IMG/VR virus record: IMGVR_UViG_3300042545_001134
Span: 1 to 64,000 of that record
DNA length: 64,000 nt
Reading direction: 5' to 3' (one strand)
A model generated the notes under the pieces. It was given only the letters and a program-made list of their open reading frames with translations, was not told the DNA's origin and did no database searches. The stretch's first letter is position 1, and every line of letters starts with the position of its first letter. This document shows, piece by piece, positions 27,483-55,730 of this stretch. The translations under genes and the position numbers were made by a program.

Positions 27483-27485
27483 AAT

Positions 27486-40931: not shown

Positions 40932-40939
40932 ATATGGTT

Positions 40940-41332: not shown

Positions 41333-41605
41333 ATGATAAAGTCATTTGAATTTAGTTATTGTCTTGATGAGGTAGAGTTCATTGAGGGCAATGTAAACAT
41401 CACTATTGATGAGAGTGTGGAGATTGTAAACAAGTTAATGAAGTCCGATGAGATATATGTCGGAGAAAGAACAAGGGGGAGTGTAACCTTTGATGAGAAC
41501 ATTCAACCTATCGTTTACGATGTCAACTATGAGTATTGTAGTGAAGTCGGAGAGGATTGGGATGAGGATAAGTGGGAGGTGTTAAGTGTTCAAGTTCAAC
41601 TATAA
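41333..41605 (+). CDS. Small acidic hypothetical protein
   Basis: Own promoter and terminator. Confidence 0.7.
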   Translation: MIKSFEFSYCLDEVEFIEGNVNITIDESVEIVNKLMKSDEIYVGERTRGSVTFDENIQPIVYDVNYEYCSEVGEDWDEDKWEVLSVQVQL

Positions 41606-41812
41606 CCAAAGGGGGTACGAAAGTATCCCTTTTTTTTTGACCACAGATTTACCATCGGGATTCAAATGTAATTTTGATTGGCACCGACCTTTACCTTACT
41701 ACCAATGTTTATGTTGCCAAACAAGTTTAGCGAACCAACATCTGTTCCCGACATCTTCCCCTTTGCCAAACAAATTATTTCTCCGAAGGTCAGGGTTCGG
41801 GTTCAAAAAAAA

Positions 41813-41833
41813 TGTTGATAACTATGTGGATAA
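41813..41833. promoter_or_regulatory. Tandem DnaA-box-like 9-mers
   Basis: TGTTGATAA (41813) and perfect TGTGGATAA (41825). Confidence 0.45.
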
Positions 41834-41928
41834 CTAAACGAAAAAAAATATAAAAAAAATACTTTTTTATTTGGTACTAATCAATTTTTGACTATATTTG
41901 TGTACCAAACAATTAAAAAACATCAGTT

Positions 41929-42453
41929 ATGACAAAAGAAACAATCAACATCACAAAAAACGAGTTAATCACTTTATTAAGTGAAATTGACAAACCAACT
42001 TTTACTAATGTAGTAATGGAAACAATGGTACGAATGAACAAGACCAATAACCCATACTATAACAAAGTAGTAAAAAGAAGTAAGTGTAACTATTCGTTAG
42101 GGGTAAACTACGAAAATCGTGTGAACAACAACTACGAAAAAGAGGGTATTGAAAATACCTTTGAAACTGAAAAACCAAGTGGCAAAACCCACATTTCAAA
42201 ATGTCTTTTAGTTAGTGACAAAGACAATTCAGTTCACTATGTAATGTTGGAACGATTTGACGAAATCAAACCTACAAACGAATTTATCTTTGAGGGTAAC
42301 GAAATTGACAAACAACTTTTTCAAGATTTTATGGTAAAGTACACCGAGAGTGTTAAACAAGAACAAGAGAGAAAAGTATCAGTTATCACACCGAAAATTG
42401 AGAACATCAAAGAAATCTCACTCAACGGAATGAAGTACATCATTGGGGAGTAA
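41929..42453 (+). CDS. Hypothetical protein
   Basis: ORF with TATATTTG promoter. Confidence 0.8.
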   Translation: MTKETINITKNELITLLSEIDKPTFTNVVMETMVRMNKTNNPYYNKVVKRSKCNYSLGVNYENRVNNNYEKEGIENTFETEKPSGKTHISKCLLVSDKDNSVHYVMLERFDEIKPTNEFIFEGNEIDKQLFQDFMVKYTESVKQEQERKVSVITPKIENIKEISLNGMKYIIGE

Positions 42454-42683
42454 GTTCCCCAACTATGAAAACCGAAGTCCCCACTTGAAAAAGTGGGGAT
42501 TTTTTTTGTCCGAAGAATTTTTCGGGACTCGTGGATTTTGAACTTTGTTTGGCATCGTATTACACGGGGGAGGAAGACGGATTCTGAAATTTGATTGGCA
42601 ACAATGGTATAGATAATTGTATTACATATACTACCCCTGCCAACCAATATTCCGGATGGAGACTCGTCTGAGTGAAAAATAAA

Positions 42684-42715
42684 TTTGGAGTATAAGAAAA
42701 TTTGTTTTATATTTG
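42684..42715 (+). promoter_or_regulatory. Example Bacteroidota sigma70 promoter; similar ones precede most cassettes at 41-59 kb
   Basis: TTTG-N20-TATATTTG. Confidence 0.85.
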
Positions 42716-42738
42716 TATAACCAATAAAAATAAAAGTT

Positions 42739-42954
42739 ATGAAAGTTATCAATTCTCGTATTACGGAACAACCCAAAAGTTTCTTTGACCCGATACCACA
42801 AGTATTCGTTACTATGGAGAATGGAGAAGAACAATTCCTATTTGATTATTATCCCGATGAGATTAGTTTCACACCTAATGAGTTCGTGGGATTAACACTT
42901 GATGAGTGTAGACACTTGAAGTTTATCAAAGACAAGAAGTATCTAACAAGTTAG
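42739..42954 (+). CDS. Hypothetical protein
   Basis: LFDYYPDEISF..EFVGLT. Confidence 0.75.
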   Translation: MKVINSRITEQPKSFFDPIPQVFVTMENGEEQFLFDYYPDEISFTPNEFVGLTLDECRHLKFIKDKKYLTS

Positions 42955-43245
42955 TGTATGAGTAAGTCATCATATAAAGAAAGATTCAAGAGTTTGGGGG
43001 TACTGATTTTGGTATCCCCTTTTTTGATTTATTATTATCTAAGGTTTTTCCTGACGGGGAGATGGTGAACCTTCCCCGATTTTGGTCGGCAATCGTATTA
43101 CATATGGTGTGGTGCCAATCAAATTTCCGGATGGACGGAGATGAGTGGGGTGGTCAAAATAAATTAAAAATAATTGAAAATAAATTTGGTTTATTAAAAT
43201 ATAATGATTACATTTGAATATGTTAAACACTAAAACTATATTATT

Positions 43246-43653
43246 ATGTCATTAGAATTCAATCCAAGAGCACAAGACCATAAGTTTTATGGTACAACTA
43301 TCGGTCAATTTACCGAAGAAGAAAAAGAACTATTCCAAGTTGACCTTATGATGTCAATGGGTTTTTCAATGGTACACCTCTCAAACAAAGATGATGGGGA
43401 GATGAAAGACGAACTGAACAAATTGGGAATGTTAAGGACACACCTTTGTATTCAACTTTTAGAAATCCCCGAAGTGTTATGTAAGATTATGGGGTTTGAA
43501 AAAACACACGAGATGATTGAGGAAAGTAAGTATGGGTTTTCGAGTTTCTTAAAATCCCAAGATGAGAACACGAAAGAACACATGGAAGAAATTGAGGAAT
43601 TAGTTAGTAACCTCAAACGAGATGTTATGATGAGTAACATATCGATGAACTAA
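43246..43653 (+). CDS. Hypothetical protein
   Basis: Cassette ORF. Confidence 0.75.
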   Translation: MSLEFNPRAQDHKFYGTTIGQFTEEEKELFQVDLMMSMGFSMVHLSNKDDGEMKDELNKLGMLRTHLCIQLLEIPEVLCKIMGFEKTHEMIEESKYGFSSFLKSQDENTKEHMEEIEELVSNLKRDVMMSNISMN

Positions 43654-43671
43654 AAGATGTTTGTTTCGAAA

Positions 43672-43701
43672 AGACCTCCACAGAAATGTGGGGGTTTTTT
43701 T
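43672..43701 (+). terminator. Terminator of the CAGAAATG-loop family (also ~47138, ~50073, ~53340)
   Basis: ACCTCCACAGAAATGTGGGGGTTTTTT. Confidence 0.8.
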
Positions 43702-43899
43702 ATGTCCACAGAATTTGGGTTCAGGGACCTGGTGAGAATTTGATTGGCAACGTATTACATGTAGTAGTGGTTCACTGGTGTGCCAATCAAAATGTTTCCG
43801 ACGCCACGGGGTGAGTGAAAATATGTTGAAATTATTTTTTCTTAATGTTGTGTATAATGATATGTGTTGTATATTTGGGTATAATTAAAAACAAACAAA

Positions 43900-44517
43900 A
43901 TGAAAAAGGAGAACATCGCACAAGGAGTAGTGGTCGGAACTATCGTTATTCTTTCACTTTTACTATCAAGTTGTGAAACACAACATTGGAAGTTTGATGA
44001 GGGAATGAAGTTCGGTACGAGTTTGACTATTAAGAACAACACCTATGGAGTGAATGACTTTAAGGTTGGTGAAGTTGGAACGTATGTCGTATCATCGGGT
44101 AGTATTGATTATGGTCGTAACATTGGAAGTACGTGGTATTTCAACGAGTACGAACCTTCTATTACTAACGGAACATATAGTGGTGAGTTACTTACGAAGT
44201 TGTACCAAGATAGTATCGGTACTATTACTTTCAACGAAAACGGAAGTGGAACACTCAACATTACCAATCAGGACACCCTGACGACAGCGGTGAAGTTTGT
44301 TTGGCAAGTTCTTAAAGAAACCAACAACGGAACTTACTTATCTATGGAGTTTGAGAACATACCAATTAAAACGTATGTAACCGAAGAACCTTTGTTTGTG
44401 TTTGGTTATGAAAAGGTGGGAGAGAAGTTGTGGAAGTATGAAACCACAATGGACACTTATAGTGGTAGGTGGAAATGGATAGGTAACAAGTTGTTAAATG
44501 ATGAAGGGGGTAATTAA
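43900..44517 (+). CDS. Lipoprotein
   Basis: Lipobox LLSSC. Confidence 0.75.
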   Translation: MKKENIAQGVVVGTIVILSLLLSSCETQHWKFDEGMKFGTSLTIKNNTYGVNDFKVGEVGTYVVSSGSIDYGRNIGSTWYFNEYEPSITNGTYSGELLTKLYQDSIGTITFNENGSGTLNITNQDTLTTAVKFVWQVLKETNNGTYLSMEFENIPIKTYVTEEPLFVFGYEKVGEKLWKYETTMDTYSGRWKWIGNKLLNDEGGN

Positions 44518-44724
44518 CCCCCTTTTTTTATGTCCACAGAATTTACATCCCCGGTCTTCTGGAAATTGGTTGGCAACCAATTTGTTGACACCAACAATAT
44601 GGTCTGTTGCCAATCAAAATGTTTCCGACGCTGCTGTCTGAGTTGGGTGGATAAAAATAAATGAAAATAAATTTGGTTTATAAAAGAATTTGTTTTATAT
44701 TTGTATAAACAAACACGAAAAACT

Positions 44725-45051
44725 ATGGACTTACAAGTATTAAAACCTCTTTGTCAAAGAGAGTTCGACCCAAACGAAACTTTAAAAGTTTTAAAACACA
44801 ATCCAACAATCTTTTGGACTTGGGGAGTTAGTAAAATGGCTAATGTAGAAGACAAAGGTTTACTGATGAAAGTAAACGGACACCACCACAAGGGGTATGT
44901 TTTTATTACATTGGCGTTTGATGACACCTATTCAGTACATATTATTTCCACACATGGAAATATTAAACAAACCTTTGATATGGTTTACTTTGATGTCTTA
45001 ACGGAAATCATCGACAACCGAATCGAAAGAATTAAAAATTATTCGTTTTAG
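44725..45051 (+). CDS. Hypothetical protein
   Basis: FWTWG..VNGHHHKG. Confidence 0.75.
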   Translation: MDLQVLKPLCQREFDPNETLKVLKHNPTIFWTWGVSKMANVEDKGLLMKVNGHHHKGYVFITLAFDDTYSVHIISTHGNIKQTFDMVYFDVLTEIIDNRIERIKNYSF

Positions 45052-45457
45052 TTGTCATTGGTATTTAGGAACTATTAAAGACAACTAATCGAAGGGGGTG
45101 AGAAATCATCCCCTTTTTTTGTGCTCAATTGGCACTGTATTTCAGGAACTGTACTGGTCCCGACAGGTGTGAATTTGATTGGCAGAACGGAAACCCTTGT
45201 AAATAAAGGAAGTATTACATCTGGGCGCTGCGCTGGTAAACCAGCACGTGCTGCTGTTCTGAGCTCAGTGAATTTGATTGGCACTGTATTACAGATAATA
45301 AGTAAACATTTTTGCTTACAAAACTTGCCAATCAATATTCCGGATGGAGCCACGGTTCGTATCCCCATAAAAATATTTTAAAAATAAATGTAAATAAATT
45401 TGGATATTAAAAAATATGTTGTATATTCGTATAATCAAACAATAAAAATATATAACT

Positions 45458-45751
45458 ATGATTAATGTAATTTTAGACACACGACCTAATGTGTACGGAT
45501 TCGGACACGATTGGTTCTTGAATGTAGAGACGAACTCTTGTTCAAAACAATTCAGACTTGGACAAGATGTTAAAGTTTGTTCACGACTTTTAGGAATGAC
45601 ACCTAAAGAAGTTACAACCGAAATTGGAAGTAACGACTTACGAAGAAAAACTACTCGTAAGAAACTTGGGGAGTATATTCTATACAAGATTGGTATTTGT
45701 TACGAAGAAGAAATTGAAACTTTACAACCTTGGGAACTTTCAGTTGATTAA
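45458..45751 (+). CDS. Hypothetical protein
   Basis: Cassette ORF. Confidence 0.75.
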   Translation: MINVILDTRPNVYGFGHDWFLNVETNSCSKQFRLGQDVKVCSRLLGMTPKEVTTEIGSNDLRRKTTRKKLGEYILYKIGICYEEEIETLQPWELSVD

Positions 45752-46045
45752 GACCTTTCATTTTTGTTTAACCCTCGGACTTAATTGTTCGGGGGTTTTT
45801 TTATGTCTGAAGAACTTGAGTCAGGGGCCCGGGTGAGAATTTGATTGGCAACAAATCTTGCCGAACAAGTTTCACAGTGGGCCCTGAACTGAGATGGAAA
45901 CTTCTTGATGTTGCCAATCAATATTCCGGATGGTGCATGGTGAAGTATCCTTCAGAAAAATAATTTGAAAATAAATGAAAATAAATTTGGAATATCCAAC
46001 TATTCATATTATATTTGTGTATTGTTAATCACTAATACTATTATT

Positions 46046-46249
46046 ATGTCAGAAAAACTGAAAATTCAAAGTTCAATCGTACCAACTGAAAGACCATCTT
46101 TCAACGAATGGGTACAAGAAAAAAATGTATCGGGTTTGTATCTTGAACCAACGGAGTACTATCGAGGTAATTCTACCACAATAGGAATGATGTACCTTAA
46201 AAAAGAAGAAACCCCATTATCTAAATTTATTAAATTCTTTTCAATATGA
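46046..46249 (+). CDS. Hypothetical protein
   Basis: Start MSEK at 46046; ERPSFNEW motif. Confidence 0.65.
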   Translation: MSEKLKIQSSIVPTERPSFNEWVQEKNVSGLYLEPTEYYRGNSTTIGMMYLKKEETPLSKFIKFFSI

Positions 46250-46482
46250 TGAGTAACGAATTAATCGGAAAAAGAATCAAACTTATTACAATGTTTGATG
46301 ACCCACACCCAATCGAAAGTGGAAGTATGGGAACAATTTCTCACGTCGGTGGTGATGTGATGAATGTAACTTGGGACAACGGGAGAAGTCTTGGTGTAGT
46401 AATCGGAGTAGACAAGTACGAAATACTTGAAGACACTGACCTACCACCCCACAATTTTCTTGTCTTTTCGGGAAATATCTGA
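46246..46482 (+). CDS. DUF4314-like protein
   Basis: MFDDPHPI..GTISHV..VTWDNGRSLGV. Confidence 0.75.
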   Translation: MMSNELIGKRIKLITMFDDPHPIESGSMGTISHVGGDVMNVTWDNGRSLGVVIGVDKYEILEDTDLPPHNFLVFSGNI

Positions 46483-46591
46483 GGGACAGCACACGGGTGG
46501 AATTTGATTGGCAACAAAATAAAGTTTCACCCATTGTATATCCCAAAAATTAATCGTATATTTGTACCACAATTTAAAACCCTATATAGAG

Positions 46592-46915
46592 ATGTTAATT
46601 AAACTAACGTATTACGGAACAGGTAAACCAACTTTGGTGAACCTTGAAAGTGTAGAAACAATGTACCAAGTGATAGACAAGAATAGAACTCGTTTATCTA
46701 CAAAGGTGTCATTTAAAGGTGGTAACTATATCAACGTAGAGGAAGAACTGCAGGAAATTTTAAAACACCAATCGAATCTGATGAAAGGCATCGACCAAGA
46801 TTTTGATTGGCAAAGTCCAACAATAGACGATATGTTAGAACTTGATTACAATCGTCAACAAACACATCCTAAACGTGATTGGACACGTAACGAAAGAGTT
46901 ATTAATAACTATTAA
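46592..46915 (+). CDS. Hypothetical protein
   Basis: Start MLIK at 46592. Confidence 0.7.
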   Translation: MLIKLTYYGTGKPTLVNLESVETMYQVIDKNRTRLSTKVSFKGGNYINVEEELQEILKHQSNLMKGIDQDFDWQSPTIDDMLELDYNRQQTHPKRDWTRNERVINNY

Positions 46916-47401
46916 AATAAACGACTATGATTAGTATGTTAAAAGAATTCTACACTTTGAGTAAAGAAGTGTATTACACAGATAGGAAAGAATTTTGGGA
47001 ATCCATATTAGGTATGGTACTCATAGTGGGAATGTTCTTGGTAACGTTCTACGTACTCATCCCTATCTTCACGGAAGGCCCGTCATATCTTGATTAATCA
47101 TTGTTTGGTTCATATTGATTAGTGTTTGGTTAGTAAGAAATCCCTCATCAGAAATGGTGGGGGTTTTTTCTGCTCTGAAGTTTCTTTCCCACTGCGGTCC
47201 GCATGCGGGACCAGGTCCAATTTTGGTTGGCAGTGTATGACATATAAAGGGTGTATTACACTTAGGGTTGCCAATCAAATTCAGGGATTAGCATGACGGT
47301 GAGCAACTCCTCAAGAAAAAATAAATTTAAAATAATTGAAAATAAATTTGGATTATACTTAAAACTGTTTTATCTTTGTGTAACAATTAAAAAATAATCA
47401 A

Positions 47402-48259
47402 ATGACAGAACAAACAAATCGTGTTCAAGATGTACTGAATCAGACAGGCTTGAATTGGACAGTTAGAGAAGAATCTCTTACAACTGAAAGTGGTATCATT
47501 ATCCCACAACAAAAGGCAATCATCCGTGATGATACGAACACGGTATTGTCAGTTCACGGTGAGGGTTATTACCCTTATCAAAATCATCAACTAATTGAGT
47601 TACTTGATAAGGTATCTCAACAAGTAGGTTTACCTATTCACAAAGGTGGTATGTTTGGTGATGGTAAGAAAGTGTTTATCCAATTAAAGTCTAATGACCT
47701 TAAGCTGGGAACAGACAGAGTAGAGGGTTTCATTACTGGTGTTAATTCATTCGATGGTTCAACATCATTGGCATTCGGACCCAGTAACATTACTATCTCT
47801 TGTCAAAACACATTCTTCGCAGCGTTCCGTAACATGGACACTAAAGTTCGCCACACTAAAAACATGGTGATGAGAGTAGATGAAATCTGCCGTGGTTTGG
47901 AAAGAGTTATTGAAGAAGAAGCTGTGATGTTTGAAGATATCAAACAAATGGCGGACACTAAAATGACAAAGGAAAACCAAGAGTGGGTATCTCGTGTATT
48001 GTTTAATATCGAAAGAGAAGTAAACCTTAACGATGAGAAGTCGTTGTCAACTGTTACTCGTAACAAACTATCTCGTTTTGAAATTGACCTTAATGGTGAA
48101 TTGAAAGATAAAGGTGATAGTCTTTGGGGTTTGTTTAGTGGTGTAACAAAATACACAACTCACTCAATGATTAAAGGTGATAATAGTGAGAACAAAATGT
48201 TTGGTGTTTACGGACAAAGAGAACGAAACATTTTCAAACAACTTGTAGAGTTGGTGTAA
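47402..48259 (+). CDS. DUF932/DUF945 phage-plasmid protein
   Basis: GLNWTV, NSFDGST, CQNTF, LWGLFSGVT.Y..H. Confidence 0.85.
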   Translation: MTEQTNRVQDVLNQTGLNWTVREESLTTESGIIIPQQKAIIRDDTNTVLSVHGEGYYPYQNHQLIELLDKVSQQVGLPIHKGGMFGDGKKVFIQLKSNDLKLGTDRVEGFITGVNSFDGSTSLAFGPSNITISCQNTFFAAFRNMDTKVRHTKNMVMRVDEICRGLERVIEEEAVMFEDIKQMADTKMTKENQEWVSRVLFNIEREVNLNDEKSLSTVTRNKLSRFEIDLNGELKDKGDSLWGLFSGVTKYTTHSMIKGDNSENKMFGVYGQRERNIFKQLVELV

Positions 48260-48452
48260 TACGATAAATTTATTTTTTTCTAATCTAAAACCCCGTTGTC
48301 GTGAGATAGTCGGGGTTTTTTTATGCGCTGAAGTGTGCAGTGGAGCCGCACAGTTGCAGCTCAGAATTTGTTTGGCATAAAAAAATATAAAATAAATTTG
48401 GTATAATAAAATAATTGTTTTATCTTTGTATAATAATCAAAACACAAACACT

Positions 48453-48674
48453 ATGATAAAATCTATTGATGAAAAAAAGAGAGGTAAGGTAGAGATTGAC
48501 CTTACCGGTCCTGACGGAAACGCATTTGTACTATTAGGTCTTGCGAGTAAATGGTCTAAACAAGTTGGTTTAGATTCTAAAAAGATTCACGATGAAATGA
48601 CAAGTGGAGATTATGAGAACTTAGTCGACACTCTCGAAAAGTATTTCGGAGATTATATTATCCTTTATCGTTAA
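48453..48674 (+). CDS. Hypothetical protein
   Basis: IDLTGPDGNAF..SGDYENL. Confidence 0.75.
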   Translation: MIKSIDEKKRGKVEIDLTGPDGNAFVLLGLASKWSKQVGLDSKKIHDEMTSGDYENLVDTLEKYFGDYIILYR

Positions 48675-48690
48675 TAACATAATAAAATAT

Positions 48691-48927
48691 ATGGAAAAAG
48701 AAATCATTTTAGAGCAGTTAGAAAAAATAACAAAAAACAAATGTGGTGGTTGGGAATTGAGATATTTTCATCACACCCTCTACGACACAATCAATAATAG
48801 TATATTAAAAGTATTGGAGGAAATAACAAGTAGTGATGACTTTGAGAAAAAATTAGAAGAAAAGATGATTGAATGTACGTTGAAAAAAATAAAGTTGTCG
48901 TCAATCTACGAAAAACTAAACCAATAG
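48691..48927 (+). CDS. Hypothetical protein
   Basis: ORF track. Confidence 0.65.
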   Translation: MEKEIILEQLEKITKNKCGGWELRYFHHTLYDTINNSILKVLEEITSSDDFEKKLEEKMIECTLKKIKLSSIYEKLNQ

Positions 48928-48933
48928 GTTAAG

Positions 48934-48960
48934 AACCCCGAATAACATCGGGGTTTTTTT
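48934..48960 (+). terminator. Terminator, near-identical to 49533-49558
   Basis: ACCCCGA(A/G)TAACATCGGGGTTTTTT. Confidence 0.8.
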
Positions 48961-49013
48961 ATGCCAACTGTGCACTGTACCTGCACAGGTGACAGGGGTG
49001 ATTTTGTTTGGCA

Positions 49014-49217
49014 TTACATATCATCTAAGAACCTATCACTATATTCCTTTTCATCATCTTTTATTTCTTTGTGTAACCTATACATGTAATAGATAACAAA
49101 GACAAACAACTCAACCCATATCGTATATAATATTCCTTCTACCATGTGTAATAAATATGCCAACCAAAATCGGGAGTCGGACGACAGGTGGTCATCTCCG
49201 TAAAAGATTTTGGTCAT
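49014..49217 (-). CDS. Possible small membrane protein, counter-oriented in the block
   Basis: ORF track only. Confidence 0.35.
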   Translation of the reverse strand: MTKIFYGDDHLSSDSRFWLAYLLHMVEGILYTIWVELFVFVIYYMYRLHKEIKDDEKEYSDRFLDDM

Positions 49218-49278
49218 TCACAAATAAATTTGGTAAAAAGAAAAAATTATTATATCTTTACATTCTAAATTAAAAATT

Positions 49279-49527
49279 ATGGAATATTCAGTAGAACCAA
49301 AAATGTTAAAACAATGGACTGACTTATCGAAAGAAGTCCTTCAAGGTAAAACAATTACCGAAGTTCGGTATCTCAATGATGAAGAAATGAAAATGATGGG
49401 TTGGTACAAACGACCAATTTGTTTTTTCTTAAACGATGGTACAAGTTGTATTCTCTCTTGTGATGATGAGGGTAATGATGGTGGAGTTTTATTTTATGGA
49501 AAGGATGGAGTACTTCCCGTATTGTAA
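49279..49527 (+). CDS. Hypothetical protein
   Basis: DDEGNDGG. Confidence 0.75.
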   Translation: MEYSVEPKMLKQWTDLSKEVLQGKTITEVRYLNDEEMKMMGWYKRPICFFLNDGTSCILSCDDEGNDGGVLFYGKDGVLPVL

Positions 49528-49681
49528 ACAAAGACCCCGAGTAACATCGGGGTTTTTTAATTCCCGTGGCGGGAAGGTTCAGGGCGGAATTTGATTGGCA
49601 AAAATAAATGAAAATAAATTTGTTTTATAAAGGTATTAGTTTTATATTTGTATCGTCTACTAACCAATAGACACCAACACT

Positions 49682-50068
49682 ATGAAAAGTACAATTAAAG
49701 AGTATTATGATTTCTTGAAGAAACAAGATTCAGAGAGATTGGAAAAATTATCTCAAGTAAAAGGTCAGGTTGATAATCAAATGGATACCTATATGTCCAA
49801 ACATGGTTGGGTACGAAAAGGTAAAAGTCAAAAGGTATTCTACACCAAACAATTCAATGGTAAGGATATCGTTGTCGAATATCGTTGTAACTACGGAAAG
49901 GACTTTGATTGTGGGTTACCCGAGTTCGTACACGACAAGTCAATCCCTCATAGTGTTGATAAAATACAAATGGGTTACTTTCATTGGAACGACCAAGACA
50001 CAAGTGGTTGGAGTTTAGATGTGGTAATGGAACGAATGGAAGTCTTTTATGACAAGTACACGAAGTAA
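49682..50068 (+). CDS. Hypothetical protein
   Basis: Cassette ORF. Confidence 0.7.
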   Translation: MKSTIKEYYDFLKKQDSERLEKLSQVKGQVDNQMDTYMSKHGWVRKGKSQKVFYTKQFNGKDIVVEYRCNYGKDFDCGLPEFVHDKSIPHSVDKIQMGYFHWNDQDTSGWSLDVVMERMEVFYDKYTK

Positions 50069-50308
50069 AACGAAACCCTCACAGAAATGTGGGGGTTTTT
50101 TATTTACCTGAAGACTTGAGTCGGGGCCCCTGATGGAATTTGGTTGGCACACAATAGACCATTACAATATGTAATACGTTGCCAACCAATATCCGGATGG
50201 AGACTCACATCTGAGATGGTCTATCAAAAAAAAATAAAAAAAGTATAAAATAAATTTGGTTATACGAAATATTGTTTTATCTTTGTATTGTAATCAAACA
50301 AACAAATT

Positions 50309-50509
50309 ATGTCAAAGTATCAAGTATTATCACCCGATGGGTTTACCATCGAAAGAGAACCCTCTTACTACACAAGTAAGAAAAAGGCGATGGAATCGTT
50401 TTTAAAGTGGAAAGAAAATTACCAAAGACAAGGTTACTACTCATCTACAAAGTATGGTAGAATTCATTTGTCTGATTTAGGAGAGTATTGTCAATTTATA
50501 AAATTATAA
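50309..50509 (+). CDS. Hypothetical protein
   Basis: Cassette ORF. Confidence 0.7.
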   Translation: MSKYQVLSPDGFTIEREPSYYTSKKKAMESFLKWKENYQRQGYYSSTKYGRIHLSDLGEYCQFIKL

Positions 50510-50513
50510 TCGT

Positions 50514-50834
50514 ATGGAAAAGTTCAATCAATTATGTGTATGGTCAGGCACACTTGTAGGTGTAGACCAAATTAAAGATTTTGAAAAGTTTATGTTAGAG
50601 GATGTAGGTGCTCGTGTTAAATACGAAACTGAAATCGAAACATTACCAACTGATGGTGTACCCGAAACGGGAGGAAGAAACGATTTGTTCTTCTTTATTC
50701 ACGATGACGACATCATGAAATTCGCGGTACCTCGTTTATCAATGGGTATTCGTTGGTGGGAAGATGTGTTAAGTAATGGTGGTGGAGTATTGTACAAAGA
50801 AGAAGTATTAATAAAATATCCTAAAACTTGGTAA
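50514..50834 (+). CDS. Hypothetical protein
   Basis: GGRNDLFF..RWWED. Confidence 0.75.
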   Translation: MEKFNQLCVWSGTLVGVDQIKDFEKFMLEDVGARVKYETEIETLPTDGVPETGGRNDLFFFIHDDDIMKFAVPRLSMGIRWWEDVLSNGGGVLYKEEVLIKYPKTW

Positions 50835-50836
50835 TC

Positions 50837-51103
50837 ATGGAAAAATTTAATTTCTACCTTGACCAAAAGGTAACAACATGGATGAGAACGGAATTCTCAG
50901 TCGAAGGTGAATCCCGTGAAGTTGCTCGGCAGATGGCAGTGGACTTCGTAAAGAAAGGTAATACATCAGAGTTACCTTGGGAGGAAGTGATGGACACCAA
51001 AGAGATTATGTTTCTTAAAGATAATGGTGGTATGTCTACCGAAGAAATCTTTGAAGAAGATGGAACTTATGTTTATGTAAATGGAAAGGACGAAGATGAG
51101 TAA
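50837..51103 (+). CDS. Hypothetical protein
   Basis: Operon continuation. Confidence 0.7.
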   Translation: MEKFNFYLDQKVTTWMRTEFSVEGESREVARQMAVDFVKKGNTSELPWEEVMDTKEIMFLKDNGGMSTEEIFEEDGTYVYVNGKDEDE

Positions 51104-51263
51104 TCTAATTGAATGTACCTTTTGTTATTGGGTGGGTGAGGAAGATGAACTCCTTACACAAATGGTAGATAATCAGAATAACCCACAAGACCACACCTTG
51201 TACGAGGAAGTAGTATGTCCACAATGTAAAACCAAAGAAGACCTATCATGCAATATAAAGTAG
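51096..51263 (+). CDS. Small zinc-ribbon protein
   Basis: CTFC..CPQC. Confidence 0.65.
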   Translation: MSNLIECTFCYWVGEEDELLTQMVDNQNNPQDHTLYEEVVCPQCKTKEDLSCNIK

Positions 51264-51601
51264 TATCGTCATCAAACCCATCTGAACTTTCGTCGAAGGT
51301 ATCTGAGATGGTGAATTTAGGTTGGCAACCGGTAGGTGGTCATCAAGTAACCACAACACGAGAAGTGAATCGTTATAGTGGACAACAACACATGGATACG
51401 ATGTATCACACCGAGTACACCCAAACAATGGTAAAGGATGTATTACACATTAAAGACGAAGTTGTGAAAGTCCTTAACACGTTAAAGACCGATGCCGAGA
51501 TGGCGTTAAGTGGAGAATGGGATTGTACTACATCGGAAGGAATGGAAAGTTTCAATGACCAAATTGAACTAATAGATAAAGTACTTGACATTTTGAAATA
51601 G
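51248..51601 (+). CDS. DUF1737-like protein
   Basis: YKVVS..LSSKVSEMVNLGWQPVGG. Confidence 0.6.
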   Translation: MQYKVVSSSNPSELSSKVSEMVNLGWQPVGGHQVTTTREVNRYSGQQHMDTMYHTEYTQTMVKDVLHIKDEVVKVLNTLKTDAEMALSGEWDCTTSEGMESFNDQIELIDKVLDILK

Positions 51602-52009
51602 GTTTCGTATTATTAAGTATATAGACTACATTTCATAGTTGTGGTTTGTGTTTGGTTGAATGGGGGTAAGAAATTATCCCCTTTCTTTTTGTCCAAAATT
51701 CCCGATACAATATACGCCAGGGGGAATTTCTGGGCCACCAGTCGATTTTTGCTTGGCAAGAATTAGTATGTTGCCAACCAATATTCATCAGGACCCAGGG
51801 TCAGAACTTCAGGATAATCGTTAAGAAAGAAATTCTAAAATAAATTTGGATATTCCAACTTTTATTATTAACTTCGTTCTATACAAAGTCAAAGTTATAT
51901 GTGGATAACTTTCATCAAAATAAATAAAAATAAATTTGGTGGACTGAAATAAACTTTATATCTTTGTATTGTAAATTAATTATTATTCATTTAACTAAAT
52001 CAAAAGAAG

Positions 52010-52756
52010 ATGATTTCAAACGGAAAAAAAGTGAACCAAGTGTTCCAAACAAAAAACTACGGAATTTTTAAGTTCCGTACCGACAACCGAGTACTTAACC
52101 CTACTCACATTAAAAAACTATCTGAAAAGATGAAGAACATTGGGTGGATTCCCGGTTCTTATGTTGTAATCAACGAGAAAGGTGAAATTATTGACGGACA
52201 ACACCGAGTAAGTGCCGCCAAAATGGTAGGAGTTCCTATCTCTTACACCATTGAAAGAAAGTCAAACTTTGACACCATTCGTAGTTTGAACCAAAACCAA
52301 AAGAATTGGTCATTCACCGATTACATTCACGGATATGTTAAAGAGGACAATGTACATTATACATTGTTAGATGAATTCCTTACCGAGTTCAAAGATTTCA
52401 AACCAACCGAGGCGTTGATGTTTTTACAAAACAATTCAAATCCCGTACATCGTGATGTATTTGAAAGTGGTTCGTGGGAATCAAAAGATGTGGAGTTAGG
52501 TAAAGATTGGGCTAAAAAGATTCAATCACTTAAACCATTCTTTGATAAAGGTTACAACAAGTCAATCTTTGTAAGGTCAATGATTAAGTTGATGTCAAGA
52601 AAACCCGAGTTTACCTTTGAGGAGTTCTTACACAAAGTTCAACTAAGACCTGGAATGATTCACCTTTGTGGTTCAGTTGAATTATACACCGAAATGATTG
52701 AGGACATCTACAACTATCGTAGACGAAACAATGAAAAACTTAATCTTCGTTTTTGA
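52010..52756 (+). CDS. ParB N-terminal-like domain protein
   Basis: HIKKL..VINEKGEIIDGQHRVSAA. Confidence 0.75.
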   Translation: MISNGKKVNQVFQTKNYGIFKFRTDNRVLNPTHIKKLSEKMKNIGWIPGSYVVINEKGEIIDGQHRVSAAKMVGVPISYTIERKSNFDTIRSLNQNQKNWSFTDYIHGYVKEDNVHYTLLDEFLTEFKDFKPTEALMFLQNNSNPVHRDVFESGSWESKDVELGKDWAKKIQSLKPFFDKGYNKSIFVRSMIKLMSRKPEFTFEEFLHKVQLRPGMIHLCGSVELYTEMIEDIYNYRRRNNEKLNLRF

Positions 52757-52940
52757 TTTAGGAACGATGAATAACGAGAGGGGGTATCTGAAAAGATATC
52801 CCTTTTTTTTGTGTCATACATTTCCTTCCCGCCGCAGGACCTGAGATGTCGGATTTTGTTTGGCAAACTTTTTTTTGATATTTTATTGTTTATTCAAATA
52901 TTCTTCTTACCTTTGCTCTTGAAATCAACTACATAGTATT

Positions 52941-53312
52941 ATGTTTCAAAAAGAAAAAAAGAACAACGCGGTCTCATTGAAGAAATCTTTAAATGAAATT
53001 CGTAAGTGTTTAAACAAAAGTATCCCTAATATTTCTGATAAAGAATTAGTAGGGGTGAAGTTTTCTCGTATTGGTGCAGAGTATCGTATAGAGAACGCTC
53101 CCATTCCACCATCTGATACAATCGGATTACAACTTGAAAAGTCATTCAACGACTTCATGAGTAATCTGAATATAAACTATGGTGGAGTTAAGATTGAAGG
53201 TTCCATGTTTTTGGGAACTAAATCGGACATGTTCATGTTGGGTTACAACAACTACGAACGAAAAGGAAAGAAAATAACCAAAAATGGTTATTCAATAGAT
53301 GGAAGTTTATAG
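52941..53312 (+). CDS. Hypothetical protein
   Basis: Cassette ORF. Confidence 0.65.
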   Translation: MFQKEKKNNAVSLKKSLNEIRKCLNKSIPNISDKELVGVKFSRIGAEYRIENAPIPPSDTIGLQLEKSFNDFMSNLNINYGGVKIEGSMFLGTKSDMFMLGYNNYERKGKKITKNGYSIDGSL

Positions 53313-53675
53313 TGTAGATTAATAATTGTTCGGTTCAGGAAACCTCGGCAGAAATGTCGGGGTTTTTTTATGCTGCAAAATCTGTAGCAACGCAGCGCGC
53401 AAACATCCAGTGATTTTGTTTGGCAGAATGTAAACCCCCGTAAATAAAGGAATTCTTATTTCTAGTTAAAACAGCACATCGCCAGTAATGGCAGCGCAAC
53501 CTGGTGCTGTTGCTGCCAGGTGATTTTGTTTGGCAGTTGCCAACCAACATTCACAGTGGGCCCCTGAAGACGACTCGAAAAAATAAATGAAAAAAAATAT
53601 AAAAATAATTTGGTTATACGAAATATTGTTTTATCTTTGTACTGTAATCAAAACATAAACAAAAAAATTAAAATT

Positions 53676-54275
53676 ATGGGTCAGTATTTTAAAGCAATCG
53701 TATTAGGTAACGAACCTAAAGACGGAGAACAAGAAGTAGTAAAGTCGTGGGTATATTCACATGAATATGACAACGGACTTAAACTGATGGAACATTCCTA
53801 TCAAGGAAACACTTACGTTTCTACATTTGAAAAGGAATTAACTCGTAGAGGTACAAACTATAAAAGTCGTGTAGTTTGGGCTGGTGATTATGCGGATGTG
53901 GAACCTGGAGTAAAAATCATTCAAGAAGGTAAAGAGTACGATGCAAATTTGTATTCACTTTGTCATGACGGCAACGAGGTTAAACCTAAAGTGGGAAACA
54001 CTAAAGATTACCCGTACATTTTAAATCACTCTAAAAAATTATTCGTGGATAAAAACAAGGTTCCCGAAATTCAGGATTGGGAAGGCACAAAGATTCACCC
54101 TTTACCATTATTAACATGTGAAGGTAACGGACAAGGTGGTGGAGATTTTAGGGGTGAACATGTTTTAATTGGTTCATGGGCAAGAGATGTTATTTCTGTG
54201 GAAAAAGATAATCCCGTAATAACTCACGGAACTATGGACTACACCGAGATAATTTTTGATTTGAAAGAAGGATAG
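53676..54275 (+). CDS. Hypothetical protein
   Basis: MGQYFK..KLMEHSY..VWAGDYAD..HPLPLLT.EGNG.GGGD. Confidence 0.8.
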   Translation: MGQYFKAIVLGNEPKDGEQEVVKSWVYSHEYDNGLKLMEHSYQGNTYVSTFEKELTRRGTNYKSRVVWAGDYADVEPGVKIIQEGKEYDANLYSLCHDGNEVKPKVGNTKDYPYILNHSKKLFVDKNKVPEIQDWEGTKIHPLPLLTCEGNGQGGGDFRGEHVLIGSWARDVISVEKDNPVITHGTMDYTEIIFDLKEG

Positions 54276-54391
54276 ATAAATAATCCCCCCTAACAGGGGG
54301 GAATTTGTTTGGCAAAAATAATTGAAAATAAATTTGGTTTATAAAAGTATTCGTATTATATTTGTATTACCAAACATTAAACACTAAAAAT

Positions 54392-54787
54392 ATGAAAAGT
54401 ATTAAAGTTCGTTTCAATCTCGGTAGAGGTAAAAACTATTTGAAGTGGAAGGTAACACATCCTGATGGTGATGTTATCTACTATAGTCCTGATGAAGTAC
54501 AAATGGTAATGACCGAGTGTACATTTAAGAACCACAAGAGTACCGCACAGAAAATTTTCGATGGTGCACACAAAACAGTTTGTGCGTGGATACTATGTAA
54601 GGACATTAAGATTTACACAGGTAAACCAATCACGGATGAAAGTAGAAGGGTTCGTTATAATCCACGTGTCCAACCTAACTGGATATTCGATGGTCATATC
54701 ATGGATAATGATGGGGTGCCGAAATTACACACAATTGAAAGTGGCGTTTATATCACAGAAGGAAAAGGTGAAAATTGTTTGGCATAA
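54392..54787 (+). CDS. Hypothetical protein
   Basis: KVRFNL..HKTVCAW..YNPR. Confidence 0.75.
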   Translation: MKSIKVRFNLGRGKNYLKWKVTHPDGDVIYYSPDEVQMVMTECTFKNHKSTAQKIFDGAHKTVCAWILCKDIKIYTGKPITDESRRVRYNPRVQPNWIFDGHIMDNDGVPKLHTIESGVYITEGKGENCLA

Positions 54788-54865
54788 AATAAATAAAAAA
54801 AACTTTAAAAATAATTTGGTATAATAAAATAAATGTTATACCTTTGTACCACAAACAAATTTAAT

Positions 54866-55177
54866 ATGAAAAAGACCAAAGAACTTTATCGAAGTAAACT
54901 ACACACAAGAGATAAATCTCACGATGTAGTAATCATCCAAGACATTACAAGAGTAAGTGGATGTAAATTAAAAATGACCTACGAATGTTACAACGCAGTT
55001 GAACGATTTACAGGTGAACGACTTGTAGGTGGTAAATGGGAGTTTAACTTCTCGATGTCAGATTTGGGTGTATCATCCGATAGTTCAATGTATGTGAGTA
55101 GTCAAGATAACCGACTATCACGAGCAGAGGACTTAATGAAAAGAGGAATAGAATTGTTTAACATTTTAAATCAATAA
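54866..55177 (+). CDS. Hypothetical protein
   Basis: Cassette ORF. Confidence 0.7.
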   Translation: MKKTKELYRSKLHTRDKSHDVVIIQDITRVSGCKLKMTYECYNAVERFTGERLVGGKWEFNFSMSDLGVSSDSSMYVSSQDNRLSRAEDLMKRGIELFNILNQ

Positions 55178-55181
55178 GAAA

Positions 55182-55730
55182 ATGGGATTAGATATGTATC
55201 TCTCGAAAAAGACCTATGTTAAAAATTGGTCTCATCAAACTCCTGAAGAAAAACATTCAGTTGAAGTTAAGAAAGGTGGTGTATTACGCACAGACATCAA
55301 ACCTGAAAGAATAAGTTATATTACTGAAGAAGTAATGTATTGGAGAAAGTCAAACCAAATTCACGGATGGTTCTGTAACAACACGGAAGAATTGGTGGAC
55401 AATGTAAGGTACGATGTATCGAGAGACCATCTTGAACAACTACTCTCTGATTGTAAGAAGGTTTTGGAAATCTTAAACACTTCAACTAAATCAATAACTC
55501 AAGTTGCTGGTGGTTGGAAAGATGGTAAGGAATATATGGTTGATGTCGAAGTGTATGACAATGTGGATGAGGTGATGGAAATTCTACCACCAACACAGGG
55601 GTTCTTCTTTGGTTCAGATACTATCGATGATTGGTATAAGCAGGACATCGAAAACACTATCAATGTTCTTACCGAAGAACTAACAGGTATAGAGGCGTAT
55701 TCGGATTACTCATACTACGCATCTTGGTAA
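55182..55730 (+). CDS. Conserved phage hypothetical protein (MGLDMY family)
   Basis: MGLDMYL, YWRKSNQIHGWF, GFFFGS, YYASW. Confidence 0.8.
   Translation: MGLDMYLSKKTYVKNWSHQTPEEKHSVEVKKGGVLRTDIKPERISYITEEVMYWRKSNQIHGWFCNNTEELVDNVRYDVSRDHLEQLLSDCKKVLEILNTSTKSITQVAGGWKDGKEYMVDVEVYDNVDEVMEILPPTQGFFFGSDTIDDWYKQDIENTINVLTEELTGIEAYSDYSYYASW

What the first reader, a model, noticed from the sequence alone, without database searches (positions are those of the whole stretch)
42480..54330. Intergenic terminator-box-promoter modules are mosaics of shared blocks, suggesting cassette shuffling
Seen: distant gaps share blocks. Examples are TTCCGGATGG (about 42650, 43126, 45337, 45925, and a variant at 50192), CACAGTGGGCCCTGAA (45873, 53552), TTTATGTCCACAGAATTT and GCCAATCAAAATGTTTCCGACGC (43.7 and 44.5-44.6 kb), GTAAATAAAGGAA (45.2 and 53.4 kb), GTATTACA (many), and near-identical terminators (43672/50073; 48934/49533). 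Established: PeSL elements mediate gene-cassette shuffling in T4-type phages. Inference: recombination between these modules adds, deletes and reorders single-gene cassettes, giving an integron-like accessory array with no integrase visible here.
Basis: partly seen in the sequence, partly recalled or inferred. Interest (0 to 1): 0.65.

Follow-up and report, generated by a model that had tools for sequence, protein, structure and literature searches.

The report
Shuffled early-gene cassettes in jumbo phage
A 19-kb block of small early genes in an uncultured 311-kb lake phage is punctuated by repeated terminator-box-promoter modules, and related phages show single genes gained, lost and reordered with junctions mostly inside those modules, much like the PeSL cassettes of T4-type phages.

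Summary
39% of gap bases lie in 11-mers shared with another gap, against about 6% in resampled sequence.

The window is the first 64 kb of a 310,691-bp virus record. From 40.9 to 60.5 kb about 37 plus-strand genes are separated by composite modules:
- an intrinsic terminator;
- a GC-rich spacer;
- a box, GAWTTTGNTTGGCA;
- in 11-14 gaps a loop with GTATKACA and an inverted box;
- a second spacer;
- an A-rich block and a Bacteroidota-type promoter (TTTG / TAnnTTTG).

46 of 53 genomic box copies lie in this array. Twenty-six related loci show permuted gene order. Six related genomes differ by 29 clean indels, 18 of them with 12-72 nt of junction homology in a box, terminator or promoter block.

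No integrase, resolvase or Y1 transposase is found in the genome; a UvsX-like recombinase candidate is. The shuffling inference is therefore supported, as PeSL-like homologous recombination, and "integron-like" is only an analogy.

Two things are new. The box differs between lineages yet is uniform within each genome. It changes in step even at orthologous positions inside two genes. Its own function is unknown.

The parts
40933..60500 (+). The whole array: about 37 small plus-strand genes between minus-strand blocks, with 25 gaps of 40 nt or more (5,673 nt) that hold the modules.
   Evidence: ORF lists; GC-skew switches at about 40 and 60 kb; box and promoter-block distribution; gap table.
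42454..42738 (+). Long module. Terminator 42474-42503; forward boxes 42545-42554 and 42591-42600; GTATTACA at 42557 and 42619; inverted box 42638-42647; TTCCGGATGG 42650-42659; AAATAAATTTGG 42677-42688; -7 motif TATATTTG 42708-42715.
43654..43899 (+). Long module. Terminator about 43676-43701; post-terminator block shared with 44523; forward box 43740-43749; GTATTACA 43752; inverted box 43781-43790 inside the 23-mer shared with 44609; -7 motif 43870-43877.
   Evidence: (D13, D16, D19, D20).
45052..45457 (+). Long module. Terminator 45091-45116; forward boxes 45175-45184 and 45274-45283; GTAAATAAAGGAA 45199-45211; GTATTACA at 45212 and 45286; inverted box 45326-45335; TTCCGGATGG 45338; promoter block and -7 motif at 45422.
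45752..46045 (+). Long module. Terminator 45770-45797; a 62-nt terminator-to-box block 84% identical to 43690-43751; forward box 45841-45850; CACAGTGGGCCCTGAA 45873; inverted box 45912-45921; TTCCGGATGG 45924; -7 motif 46010.
   Evidence: (D16).
47098..47401 (+). Long module upstream of the DUF932 gene. Terminator 47142-47163; forward box 47223-47232; GTATGACA 47235 and GTATTACA 47253 (18 nt apart); inverted box 47269-47278; promoter block; -7 motif 47371.
   Evidence: fold.
48260..48452 (+). Short module: terminator, forward box 48368-48377 directly followed by the A-rich block and promoter (-7 motif at 48421). The box's 3' edge is the left junction of the window-specific insertion 48378-48945 (two genes), absent from L001.
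   Evidence: (72-nt junction homology, terminator to box).
48928..49278 (+). Module whose box (49004-49013) and inverted box (49158-49167) lie 145 nt apart. They enclose a conserved minus-strand mini-gene (49014 to about 49145, ORF up to 49217).
   Evidence: tblastn conservation of the minus-strand ORF in L001-L011 and L020-L025 at 33-67% identity.
50069..50308 (+). Long module. Terminator 50072-50099; forward box 50140-50149; inverted GTATTAC at 50170; inverted box 50180-50189; ATCCGGATGG 50191; promoter 90% identical over 73 nt to the one at 53580.
   Evidence: (D3, D16, D19).
53313..53675 (+). Long module. Terminator about 53344-53369; forward boxes 53416-53425 and 53526-53535; GTAAATAAAGGAA 53440; inverted box 53538-53547, only 2 nt from the second box; CACAGTGGGCCCC 53552; -7 motif 53632.
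54276..54391 (+). Short module: an 8-bp GC hairpin 54284-54302 running straight into box 54305-54314, then the A-rich block and promoter (-7 motif at 54357).
   Evidence: (D2).
54440..54790 (+). Patch about 100% identical to relative L002 amid flanks of about 78% identity. Its left edge lies inside the gene 54392-54787. Its right edge is at box 54775-54784, which encodes the last residues of that gene. L002 carries an extra promoterless gene plus box right after it.
   Evidence: Sliding identity; junction sequences.
56635..56644 (+). Box inside the 3' end of ORF 56443-56688, 27 nt before the start of gene 56672-57160. Each lineage has its own box version at this orthologous place.
57047..57060 (+). 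Box inside gene 56672-57160 (codons for EILFGN). At the same codons each lineage carries its own box version.
   Evidence: Codon alignment; contrast with the other in-gene boxes, which are not box-like in relatives.
59151..59255 (+). Three forward boxes 46 and 49 nt apart with no gene between them. Two more follow at 59639-59694, then two GTATGACA motifs at 59702 and 59723.
   Evidence: (D5, D7, D15).
59338..59523 (+). Conserved 61-aa gene between the two box clusters. The predicted fold is nearest to AP2 and integrase arm-type DNA-binding domains. It is a candidate, untested, cis-element binder.
   Evidence: Orthologues at 54-69% identity; AlphaFold2 pLDDT 79; best neighbours 6sy0 Z 5.1, 7et4 Z 4.9 (rmsd 2.2 over 46 residues), 3rmp Z 4.3, 3jtz Z 4.0. 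No Pfam hit.
47402..48259 (+). DUF932 gene, used as the anchor to fetch relatives.
   Evidence: Pfam PF06067, E 3e-27; 27 related loci.

Best explanation
The 41-60 kb stretch is the early, host-polymerase-read accessory region of an uncultured freshwater jumbo phage whose promoters are of the Bacteroidota type.

Almost every gene or gene pair is its own transcription unit. Each gap is a composite regulatory module: an intrinsic terminator, a GC-rich spacer, a conserved box, sometimes a GTATKACA loop plus an inverted box, a second spacer, an A-rich upstream block, and a -33 TTTG / -7 TAnnTTTG promoter.

The same signals recur 15-45 times and are kept alike within a genome. They therefore offer 12-70-nt homology patches. 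General homologous recombination between them deletes, inserts and reorders whole units while keeping each one expressible. The recombination could be unequal exchange within a genome or exchange between co-infecting relatives, probably using the phage's own UvsX-like recombinase and SSB. This is the mechanism proposed for PeSL cassettes in T4-type phages.

Shown here: the repeat architecture, its confinement to the array, permuted gene order, and junction homology in module blocks.
Inferred: that the promoters and terminators work, that the recombination is homologous and phage-driven, and that these are early genes.

The box is an added element that PeSLs lack. Its lineage-specific yet genome-uniform sequence suggests a site read by a co-evolving factor, or strong gene conversion. 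Its function is not known.
For: Architecture and confinement
- 46 of 53 boxes and 14 of 16 promoter blocks lie in 41-60 kb.
- The same confinement holds in two relatives' genomes: 45 of 46 box hits in 152.5-181 kb of G001, and 42 of 45 in 210.7-235.7 kb of G002.
- Terminator-like sites number 39 against 11.3 expected. Sigma-70-type promoter-like sites are not enriched, 75 against 70.9.
- TAnnTTTG sits about 20 nt after TTTG in at least 13 gaps. It is the sigma-A -7 consensus of flavobacteria (PMC9723704).

Shuffling
- Single-gene permutations appear across relatives.
- Unit indels were mapped at nucleotide level with a box at the junction. Examples: the L009 insertions at 6154-6448, 8455-8817, 11235-11540 and 13953-14449; the L006 insertion 5256-5740, where the only homology is the roughly 20-nt box; the L002 insertion near 15000-15480; and the window insertion 48378-48945.
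- Two insertions have their junction in the terminator instead. Several group-C junctions lie in the promoter and 5' UTR block.
- Of 29 non-redundant clean indels, 18 have 12-72 nt of junction homology. 13 touch a box against 7.4 expected, P about 0.016.
- In a lineage with a different box (TTTACTGGG / CCCAGTAA), one unit indel has a 60-73-nt terminator-to-box junction repeat, and another is a replacement ending in the box hairpin.

Ongoing recombination
- A 350-bp patch identical to L002 lies amid flanks of about 78% identity.
- A 73-nt repeat inside a module varies in copy number among otherwise identical genomes.

Machinery
- A UvsX-like recombinase candidate (phrog_97, E 1.8e-12) sits next to an SSB-like gene.
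- There is no integrase, resolvase, Y1 transposase or CRESS-type Rep (the Rep search rang in no control genome either, so it is weak).

Precedent: PMC2839356 and PMC4122927.
Against: - The excess of junctions at the box over random intergenic places is modest. The null is high because boxes are dense in the gaps.
- About a third of the indels have no junction homology. These are replacements or illegitimate joins.
- Recombination patches also start inside genes.
- Regions outside the array, which have no boxes, also differ greatly between the window and G002. The modules are therefore not needed for plasticity in general.
- Promoter, terminator and 'early' status rest on consensus only.
- The RNA-library contigs that cover the array may include DNA, and they break at the repeats.
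- No circle or deletion junction was seen in reads. All reported joints are explained by paralogous modules elsewhere, for example the one at 53.38 kb.
Confidence: 0.72

Rival explanations
1. Site-specific, integron-like capture. The box, or the hairpin formed by a box and its inverted copy, is a dedicated recombination site like a folded attC. An unrecognised phage recombinase or structure-specific nuclease cuts and joins it, moving cassettes as units.
For: - The box is the commonest junction. Three events have homology limited to the 13-21-nt box.
- The inverted-repeat pairs have variable loops of 2-145 nt and a recurrent internal mismatch.
- The box sequence is specific to a lineage and uniform within a genome, as attC sites are in chromosomal integrons (the attC comparison is from my own knowledge).
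- A stand-alone protein with an integrase-arm/AP2-like fold lies at the array's end, amid box clusters.
Against: - No tyrosine or serine recombinase and no Y1 transposase is present in a genome estimated 93% complete.
- Junctions also fall in terminators, promoters and 5' UTRs.
- Tandem boxes with no gene between them (59151-59255) are not expected from precise site-to-site exchange.
- Empty sites keep one forward box, which fits recombination between direct repeats.
- Most units carry their own promoter and terminator.
- Only 11-14 of 25 gaps have the inverted pair.
Confidence: 0.08
2. Regulation only. The shared blocks are repeated because every unit needs the same signals and they descend from duplicated modules. 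The rearrangements come from ordinary illegitimate recombination, and selection merely removes events that break genes.
For: - The blocks match functional consensus elements.
- 11 of 29 indels lack junction homology.
- Box-free flanking regions are also highly variable.
Against: - 18 of 29 junctions carry 12-72 nt of direct repeat. Selection on random breaks would not create this.
- Boxes are touched more often than random intergenic intervals of the same length (P about 0.016).
- Copy number of a module-internal repeat varies among 100%-identical genomes.
Confidence: 0.1
3. The box and hairpin act mainly in RNA. Read-through transcripts fold the box against its inverted copy. The hairpin then serves as a processing site or insulator between units, like the RNase III sites between T7 or SP82 early genes. 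Its use as a junction is a side effect. This can hold together with the main explanation.
For: - In lineage L019 nearly every module has a perfect 16-17-bp hairpin with a 6-20-nt loop: 23 forward and 23 inverted copies.
- One pair there carries a compensatory change in both arms (153070/153099).
- Across 166 pairs, G-U-compatible mismatches on the plus strand outnumber A-C mismatches 75 to 48.
- The loop motif GTATKACA keeps one orientation.
- RNA-library contigs run through a terminator and a hairpin (46121-47350).
Against: - In the window about two thirds of the boxes are solo and cannot pair.
- The variable box position N is mismatched in 4 of 10 window pairs and shows no covariation.
- The forward and inverted copies differ systematically at N in several lineages.
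- The G-U excess rests on paralogues that are not independent.
- Rfam finds nothing in the array.
- Hairpins directly upstream of the box are no more frequent than in shuffled sequence: 11 of 32 against 35%.
Confidence: 0.2

Closest known systems
PeSL (promoter-early stem-loop) cassettes of T4-type phages (Arbiol et al. 2010, PMC2839356; Comeau et al. 2014, PMC4122927)
   Same: - Composite terminator plus strong host-type early promoter with an AT-rich upstream block.
- Dozens of copies concentrated in a plastic region of small genes of unknown function.
- Indels between close relatives are bounded by the motif.
- The proposed mechanism is homologous recombination between motifs, which moves genes together with their own signals.
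   Different: - The phage lineage is different: an uncultured 311-kb lake phage with no close cultured relative.
- The promoter is of the Bacteroidota -33/-7 type, not sigma-70.
- The modules are longer (100-400 nt). They hold extra conserved parts that PeSLs lack: a lineage-specific box, its inverted copy, and the GTATKACA loop motif.
- Mini-circles, shown for PeSLs, could not be tested here.
Integron cassette arrays (attC sites plus IntI), especially chromosomal arrays with species-specific attC
   Same: - An array of mostly single-gene units of accessory function.
- Imperfect inverted repeats with variable loops at unit borders.
- A repeat sequence that is uniform within a genome and differs between lineages.
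   Different: - No integrase is present.
- The units have their own promoters and terminators.
- There is no RYYYAAC/GTTRRRY core.
- Junctions are not at one fixed position.
- Many borders have only a solo box.
REP/REPIN elements with RAYT transposases
   Same: Short extragenic palindromic units that occur singly or as inverted pairs after genes, with lineage-specific sequence.
   Different: - No RAYT (Y1 transposase) is present.
- The elements are confined to one 19-kb region rather than dispersed.
- They are tied to terminator and promoter modules.
Conserved RNase III processing hairpins between early genes of T7 and of Bacillus phage SP82 (from my own knowledge)
   Same: Conserved intergenic hairpins recur between early genes of a lytic phage.
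   Different: - Here each hairpin lies after a full intrinsic terminator and before a separate promoter.
- Many modules have only half of it.
- No processing evidence exists.

Membership tests
PeSL-type regulatory cassette | A composite of a stem-loop terminator and a host-type early promoter with an AT-rich upstream region. | tested here: met
   Hairpin plus T-run in most gaps: 39 terminator-like sites against 11.3 expected. AAATAAATTTGG followed about 20 nt later by TAnnTTTG in at least 13 gaps. The consensus is that of Bacteroidota, not E. coli (PMC9723704). Activity was not assayed.
PeSL-type regulatory cassette | Many copies concentrated in a hyperplastic region, mostly upstream of small genes without known function. 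| tested here: met
   14 of 16 promoter blocks and 46 of 53 boxes lie in 41-60 kb of the 311-kb genome. Most of the 28 proteins scanned have no Pfam or PHROG function.
PeSL-type regulatory cassette | Insertions, deletions and replacements between close relatives are bounded by the motif. | tested here: met
   18 of 29 clean indels have 12-72 nt of junction homology in module blocks.
PeSL-type regulatory cassette | Mini-circles formed by exchange between neighbouring motifs. | not testable with these tools
   Only assembled contigs of the public runs were served. All joints reported are cross-matches of paralogous modules.
PeSL-type regulatory cassette | Carried by a T4-type myovirus. | not tested
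   No core-gene phylogeny was made. There is no nucleotide match to deposited phages, and the DUF932 protein has only distant matches, under 30% identity in the listed hits.
Integron | An IntI tyrosine recombinase next to the array. | tested here: not met
   PF00589 has no match in the 310,691-bp genome, while 14 of 14 control genomes matched. Also no resolvase.
Integron | Each cassette ends in an attC site with the inverse-core and core motifs (RYYYAAC / GTTRRRY). | tested here: not met
   The inverted repeats are TTGNTTGGCA and TGCCAANCAA. Only 11-14 of 25 gaps have the pair; the rest have a solo box.
Integron | Mostly promoterless cassettes read from one common promoter. | tested here: not met
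   Most units have their own promoter consensus and terminator. A few promoterless units exist, for example the extra gene in L002.
Integron | Crossover at one fixed position of the core site. | tested here: not met
   Junctions lie in the box, the terminator T-run, the promoter and 5' UTR block, and elsewhere.
REP/REPIN-RAYT | A RAYT (Y1 transposase) gene, and palindromic units dispersed over the genome. | tested here: not met
   PF01797 has no match. The boxes are confined to one region.

The most novel reading that the evidence does not exclude
The box, with its GTATKACA loop and inverted copy, is not a passive homology patch. It is the recognition site of a lineage-specific phage factor that directs breaks or strand exchange to unit borders. 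That would be an integrase-free, actively targeted gene-capture system in jumbo phages. The in-step change of the box in every module and inside two conserved genes would then reflect co-evolution with that factor.
Probability: 0.12. Interest if true: 0.85.

Novelty: new variant of a known kind. Interest (0 to 1): 0.58.

Why it matters
It extends the PeSL idea, in which regulatory signals double as recombination handles that let phages swap ready-to-express genes. The idea so far rests on T4-type phages of Proteobacteria. Here it appears in an unrelated, uncultured lake jumbo-phage family with Bacteroidota-type promoters, which suggests a general route by which large phages renew their early accessory (probably host-takeover or anti-defence) genes.

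It also brings up a new cis-element. The element is uniform within a genome, differs between lineages, and changes in step even where it overlaps coding sequence. That gives a clean case for asking whether such repeats are kept by a co-evolving binding factor or by gene conversion.

The phage recurs in lake metagenomes from 2016 to 2024, and several close variants are already assembled. Population-level tests are therefore feasible.

Tried and rejected
- **Deposited phages.** Megablast of the region found no match. tblastn of DUF932 found only distant hits, so there is no cultured relative to lean on.
- **Rfam.** Only tRNAs and a tmRNA, far from the array; nothing in the modules.
- **Sigma-70 promoter scan.** No enrichment, 75 against 70.9. 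The promoters are of the Bacteroidota type instead.
- **Box as the U-tract of a second terminator.** Three cases look like that. In general, hairpins ending next to the box are as frequent as in shuffled sequence, 11 of 32 against 35%. Rejected as a rule.
- **Box as a fixed-distance activator site.** The distances from terminator to box (25-58 nt) and from inverted box to promoter (34-63 nt) vary, as read. Not supported.
- **Covariation in the box / inverted-box stem.** None at position N in the window. There is only a weak G-U over A-C excess, 75 to 48, among sequences that are not independent.
- **Hairpin loop GTATTAC as a rolling-circle nick site.** It resembles the CRESS-virus origin motif (from my own knowledge). 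No Rep or Y1 protein was found (the Rep search rang in no control genome). Junctions are not in the loops. Set aside.
- **TnpB at 61.9-63.3 kb as the box reader.** It is absent from the 80-kb stretch of relative G002 around its array that was fetched, although G002 has the same box system. Rejected.
- **Read joints**. All are explained by paralogous modules, for example the letters between the two sides of one joint match the 53.38-kb module, or by the edge of the laid stretch. This is no evidence for circles, and contigs cannot show their absence.
- **Structure of the conserved gene 56672-57160.** pLDDT 47.8, unusable. Its weak BEN and Mei5 Pfam hits are below cut-off.
- **Literature search for the box sequences.** Nothing relevant.
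- **Not used.** The large protein searches and any other genetic code; neither was needed.

Full report
**What the window is.** The window is the first 64 kb of a 310,691-bp IMG/VR virus record, linear, with completeness estimated at 93%. GC content is about 35%. It has no nucleotide match among deposited phages. The DUF932 protein has only distant matches there, under 30% identity in the listed hits. The same 10-kb stretch occurs with all, or nearly all, of its sampled words in 16 lake or freshwater DNA runs dated 2016-2024, and in part in four metatranscriptome runs. It is therefore an abundant, persistent, uncultured freshwater jumbo phage.

**The observation.** Sharing between gaps is far above chance. 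321 distinct 11-mers occur in two or more gaps, against a mean of 23 (maximum 42) after resampling. They cover 39% of the 5,673 gap bases, against about 6% resampled. Terminator-like sites number 39 against 11.3 +/- 3.6 expected.

**Anatomy.** From 40.9 to 60.5 kb about 37 small genes all lie on the plus strand, between minus-strand blocks. Reading the 25 gaps gives one composite plan, in this order:

1. A GC hairpin with a T-run.
2. A GC-rich spacer of 25-58 nt.
3. A box, GAWTTTGNTTGGCA.
4. In the long form, a loop with one or two GTATKACA motifs and then the inverted box, TGCCAANCAA, often followed by TATTCCGGATGG.
5. A second GC-rich spacer.
6. An A-rich block ending in AAATAAATTTGG.
7. About 20 nt later, TAnnTTTG, and then an A-rich leader without a Shine-Dalgarno sequence.

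TAnnTTTG is the sigma-A -7 consensus of flavobacteria (PMC9723704). Lack of Shine-Dalgarno sequences is typical of Bacteroidota (abstract of PMC6847099). Sigma-70-type sites are not enriched. In the short form the box runs directly into the A-rich block. Read on the other strand, that side resembles the terminator-to-box side (T-run, CTGAAG, GAGTC, GGAAT, box). A long module therefore looks like two copies of a roughly 50-nt element facing each other.

**Confinement.** 46 of the genome's 53 copies of TTGNTTGGCA, and 14 of 16 promoter blocks, lie in this 19-kb array. Two relatives' genomes show the same. In G001, 45 of 46 box hits lie in 152.5-181 kb. In G002, 42 of 45 lie in 210.7-235.7 kb.

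**Gene content.** The genes are typical early accessory genes:
- DUF932, a ParB-like protein, and a DUF1281_C (Api92-like) domain protein;
- DUF1737 and an L5 gp82-like protein;
- a bacterial PH-domain membrane protein.

Most of the rest have no match.

**Test against relatives.** The DUF932 protein fetched 27 related loci at 38-83% identity. tblastn of the array's genes shows reordering of single genes:

| Genome | Order of the numbered array genes |
|---|---|
| Window | 17-18-20-21-22-23-24-25-26-28 |
| L002, L009 | 21-17-22-23-20-28 |
| L006 | 17-22-23-(fragment of 24)-20-28 |
| L003 | 23-21-17-22-20-24-28 |
| L001 | lacks 17, 18 and 21; gene 20 lies between 11 and 13 |

The right-hand part (54.4-59.5 kb) keeps its order even in distant lineages.

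**Where the junctions are.** L006 and L009 are about 92% identical, so junctions can be read directly.
- In L009 the homologue of gene 21 is inserted as a unit of promoter, gene, terminator and box. It is flanked by a 56-nt repeat of box plus promoter start.
- Three more L009 insertions and one L006 insertion are bounded in the same way. In the L006 case the only homology is the roughly 20-nt box.
- A remnant of gene 24 in L006 is joined to a box through a GGTGAA microhomology.
- L002 carries an extra promoterless gene that starts after one box and ends with another.
- The window's own two-gene insertion 48378-48945 starts exactly after box 48368-48377 and has a 72-nt terminator-to-box repeat.
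- Two insertions instead have their junction in the terminator T-run.
- In group C several junctions lie in the promoter and 5' UTR block or just after a stop codon.

An automatic survey of six genomes gave 29 non-redundant clean indels. 18 have 12-72 nt of junction homology. 13 touch a box, against 7.4 expected for random intergenic intervals of equal length (P about 0.016). The modules clearly host the junctions. The box is the commonest place, but not the only one.

**Signs of ongoing general recombination.**
- A 350-bp patch of the window (54440-54790) is identical to L002 amid flanks of about 78% identity. Its left edge lies inside a gene and its right edge at a box.
- A 73-nt repeat inside a module varies in copy number among otherwise 100%-identical genomes.
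- The genome encodes a UvsX-like recombinase candidate next to an SSB-like gene.
- It encodes no tyrosine recombinase, resolvase or Y1 transposase, and no CRESS-type Rep was found.

Homologous recombination between repeated regulatory blocks, as proposed for PeSLs (PMC2839356, PMC4122927), is thus the best-supported mechanism. 'Integron-like' is an analogy only.

**Limits.**
- The stretches flanking the array, which have no boxes, also differ greatly between the window and G002. The modules are not required for plasticity in general.
- The run data were contigs only. Every joint reported is explained by a paralogous module elsewhere or by the edge of the laid stretch. Circles could be neither shown nor excluded.
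- RNA-library contigs cover many array genes and some modules, but they break at the repeats and may include DNA.

**What is new: the box.** Each lineage has its own version:

| Lineage | Box version |
|---|---|
| Window | GAWTTTGNTTGGCA |
| L001 | TTAGTTTGGCA |
| L012 | TTGGTTGGCR, paired with CGCCAACCAA |
| L013-L018 | TTTACTGGG, paired with CCCAGTAA |
| L019 | GGATTTTGTCTAGTTTT, paired with its exact complement |
| L021 | TTGTGTGGCA and GTCTGGCAA |

- In L019 the pairs form perfect 16-17-bp hairpins in nearly every module.
- At orthologous places, for example just downstream of the DUF932 gene, each lineage shows its own version.
- The loop motif GTATKACA is shared by all lineages, usually as two copies about 20 nt apart in one orientation.
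- The box inside gene 56672-57160 sits at the same codons in all lineages and carries each lineage's own version: TTG TTT GGC A in the window, TTA CTG GGT in group C, TTG TCT GGC A in L021.
- The same holds for the box in the 3' end of the preceding ORF.
- Other in-gene boxes are not box-like in relatives.

A sequence that is uniform across 20-45 copies within a genome, differs between lineages, and changes in step even under coding constraint implies one of two things: a co-evolving factor that reads it, or very effective gene conversion. I could not tell these apart. The spacers next to the box stay diverse, which favours selection on the box itself.

**What the box might do.**
- A role as the U-tract of a second terminator is not supported in general.
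- Its spacing to the terminator and to the promoter is not fixed.
- Pairing between the box and its inverted copy is strong in L019. In the window it is weak and interrupted, about two thirds of the boxes are solo, and position N does not covary.
- A conserved 61-aa protein (59338-59523), set between the two box clusters at the array's end, has a confident predicted fold (pLDDT 79). Its nearest neighbours are AP2 and integrase arm-type DNA-binding domains (Z 4-5). The scores are low, as expected for so small a domain.
- The arginines of that protein's conserved YRVR strand are invariant across lineages. If it binds DNA, the equally conserved GTATKACA is a likelier target than the variable box. 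This is a lead, not a finding.

**Verdict.** The inference of cassette shuffling through the modules is supported, as PeSL-like homologous recombination in a new phage family with a new, unexplained third component. It is a new variant of a known kind and of moderate interest.

Noticed in passing
window 6451-6857 and 149-605: A phage-borne tmRNA gene (Rfam 89.6 bits; tag peptide GNVYNNMEVAGLLATSKVAA) and four tRNA genes (Met, Gly, Gln, Ser) lie at the start of the record.
   Followed up: no
window 61900-63327 (minus strand): A TnpB-like gene (Cas12f1-like TNB domain, E 1.4e-14, plus a weak OrfB_IS605 hit) lies just beyond the array's right end. It is absent from the 80-kb stretch of relative G002 that was fetched around its array, so it is probably a separate mobile insertion. 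No Y1 transposase is present in the genome.
   Followed up: partly
window 49014-49217 (minus strand; conserved part about 49014-49145): A small minus-strand ORF, probably a membrane protein, lies between a box and its inverted copy. It is conserved at 33-67% identity in all A-lineage relatives. It looks like a promoterless unit in inverted orientation inside the plus-strand array.
   Followed up: partly
window 41825-41833 and 51900-51908: Perfect DnaA-box-like 9-mers (TGTGGATAA) lie within a shared TATGTGGATAACT block in the two longest gaps. Both gaps also have two promoter-like blocks in tandem. Similar 9-mers occur in modules of L001 and L021.
   Followed up: no
L009 3340-3540, L010 3400-3520, L024 3470-3600: A 73-nt tandem repeat inside one module, starting with an inverted-box-like CGCCAATCTAATTTCC, has three, two, and two-plus-a-part copies in genomes that are otherwise 100% identical over more than 16 kb.
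   Followed up: partly
window 46797-46812 and 51299-51328: Box-like 15-30-mers lie inside two genes of the window: codons for DFDWQ in gene 46592-46915, and for MVNLGWQP in the DUF1737 gene. They are not box-like in other lineages. They may be coincidences of coding or local conversion by a box.
   Followed up: partly
G000:C1:83911-84459 (minus strand) against G002 array: A 182-aa gene that lies inside the array of relative G002 (71% identity) sits at 84 kb on the opposite strand in this genome, outside the array and without boxes. Genes therefore also move between the array and other regions.
   Followed up: no
G000:C1:219234-220256 and 220337-221182 (minus strand): A UvsX-like recombinase candidate (phrog_97, E 1.8e-12; RecA Pfam score below cut-off) lies next to an SSB-like gene (phrog_1192).
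   Followed up: partly
window 24500-31000 against G002: A block of about 6.5 kb (seven ORFs) lies in reversed order relative to the neighbouring collinear block (16-24.4 kb) when compared with relative G002.
   Followed up: no
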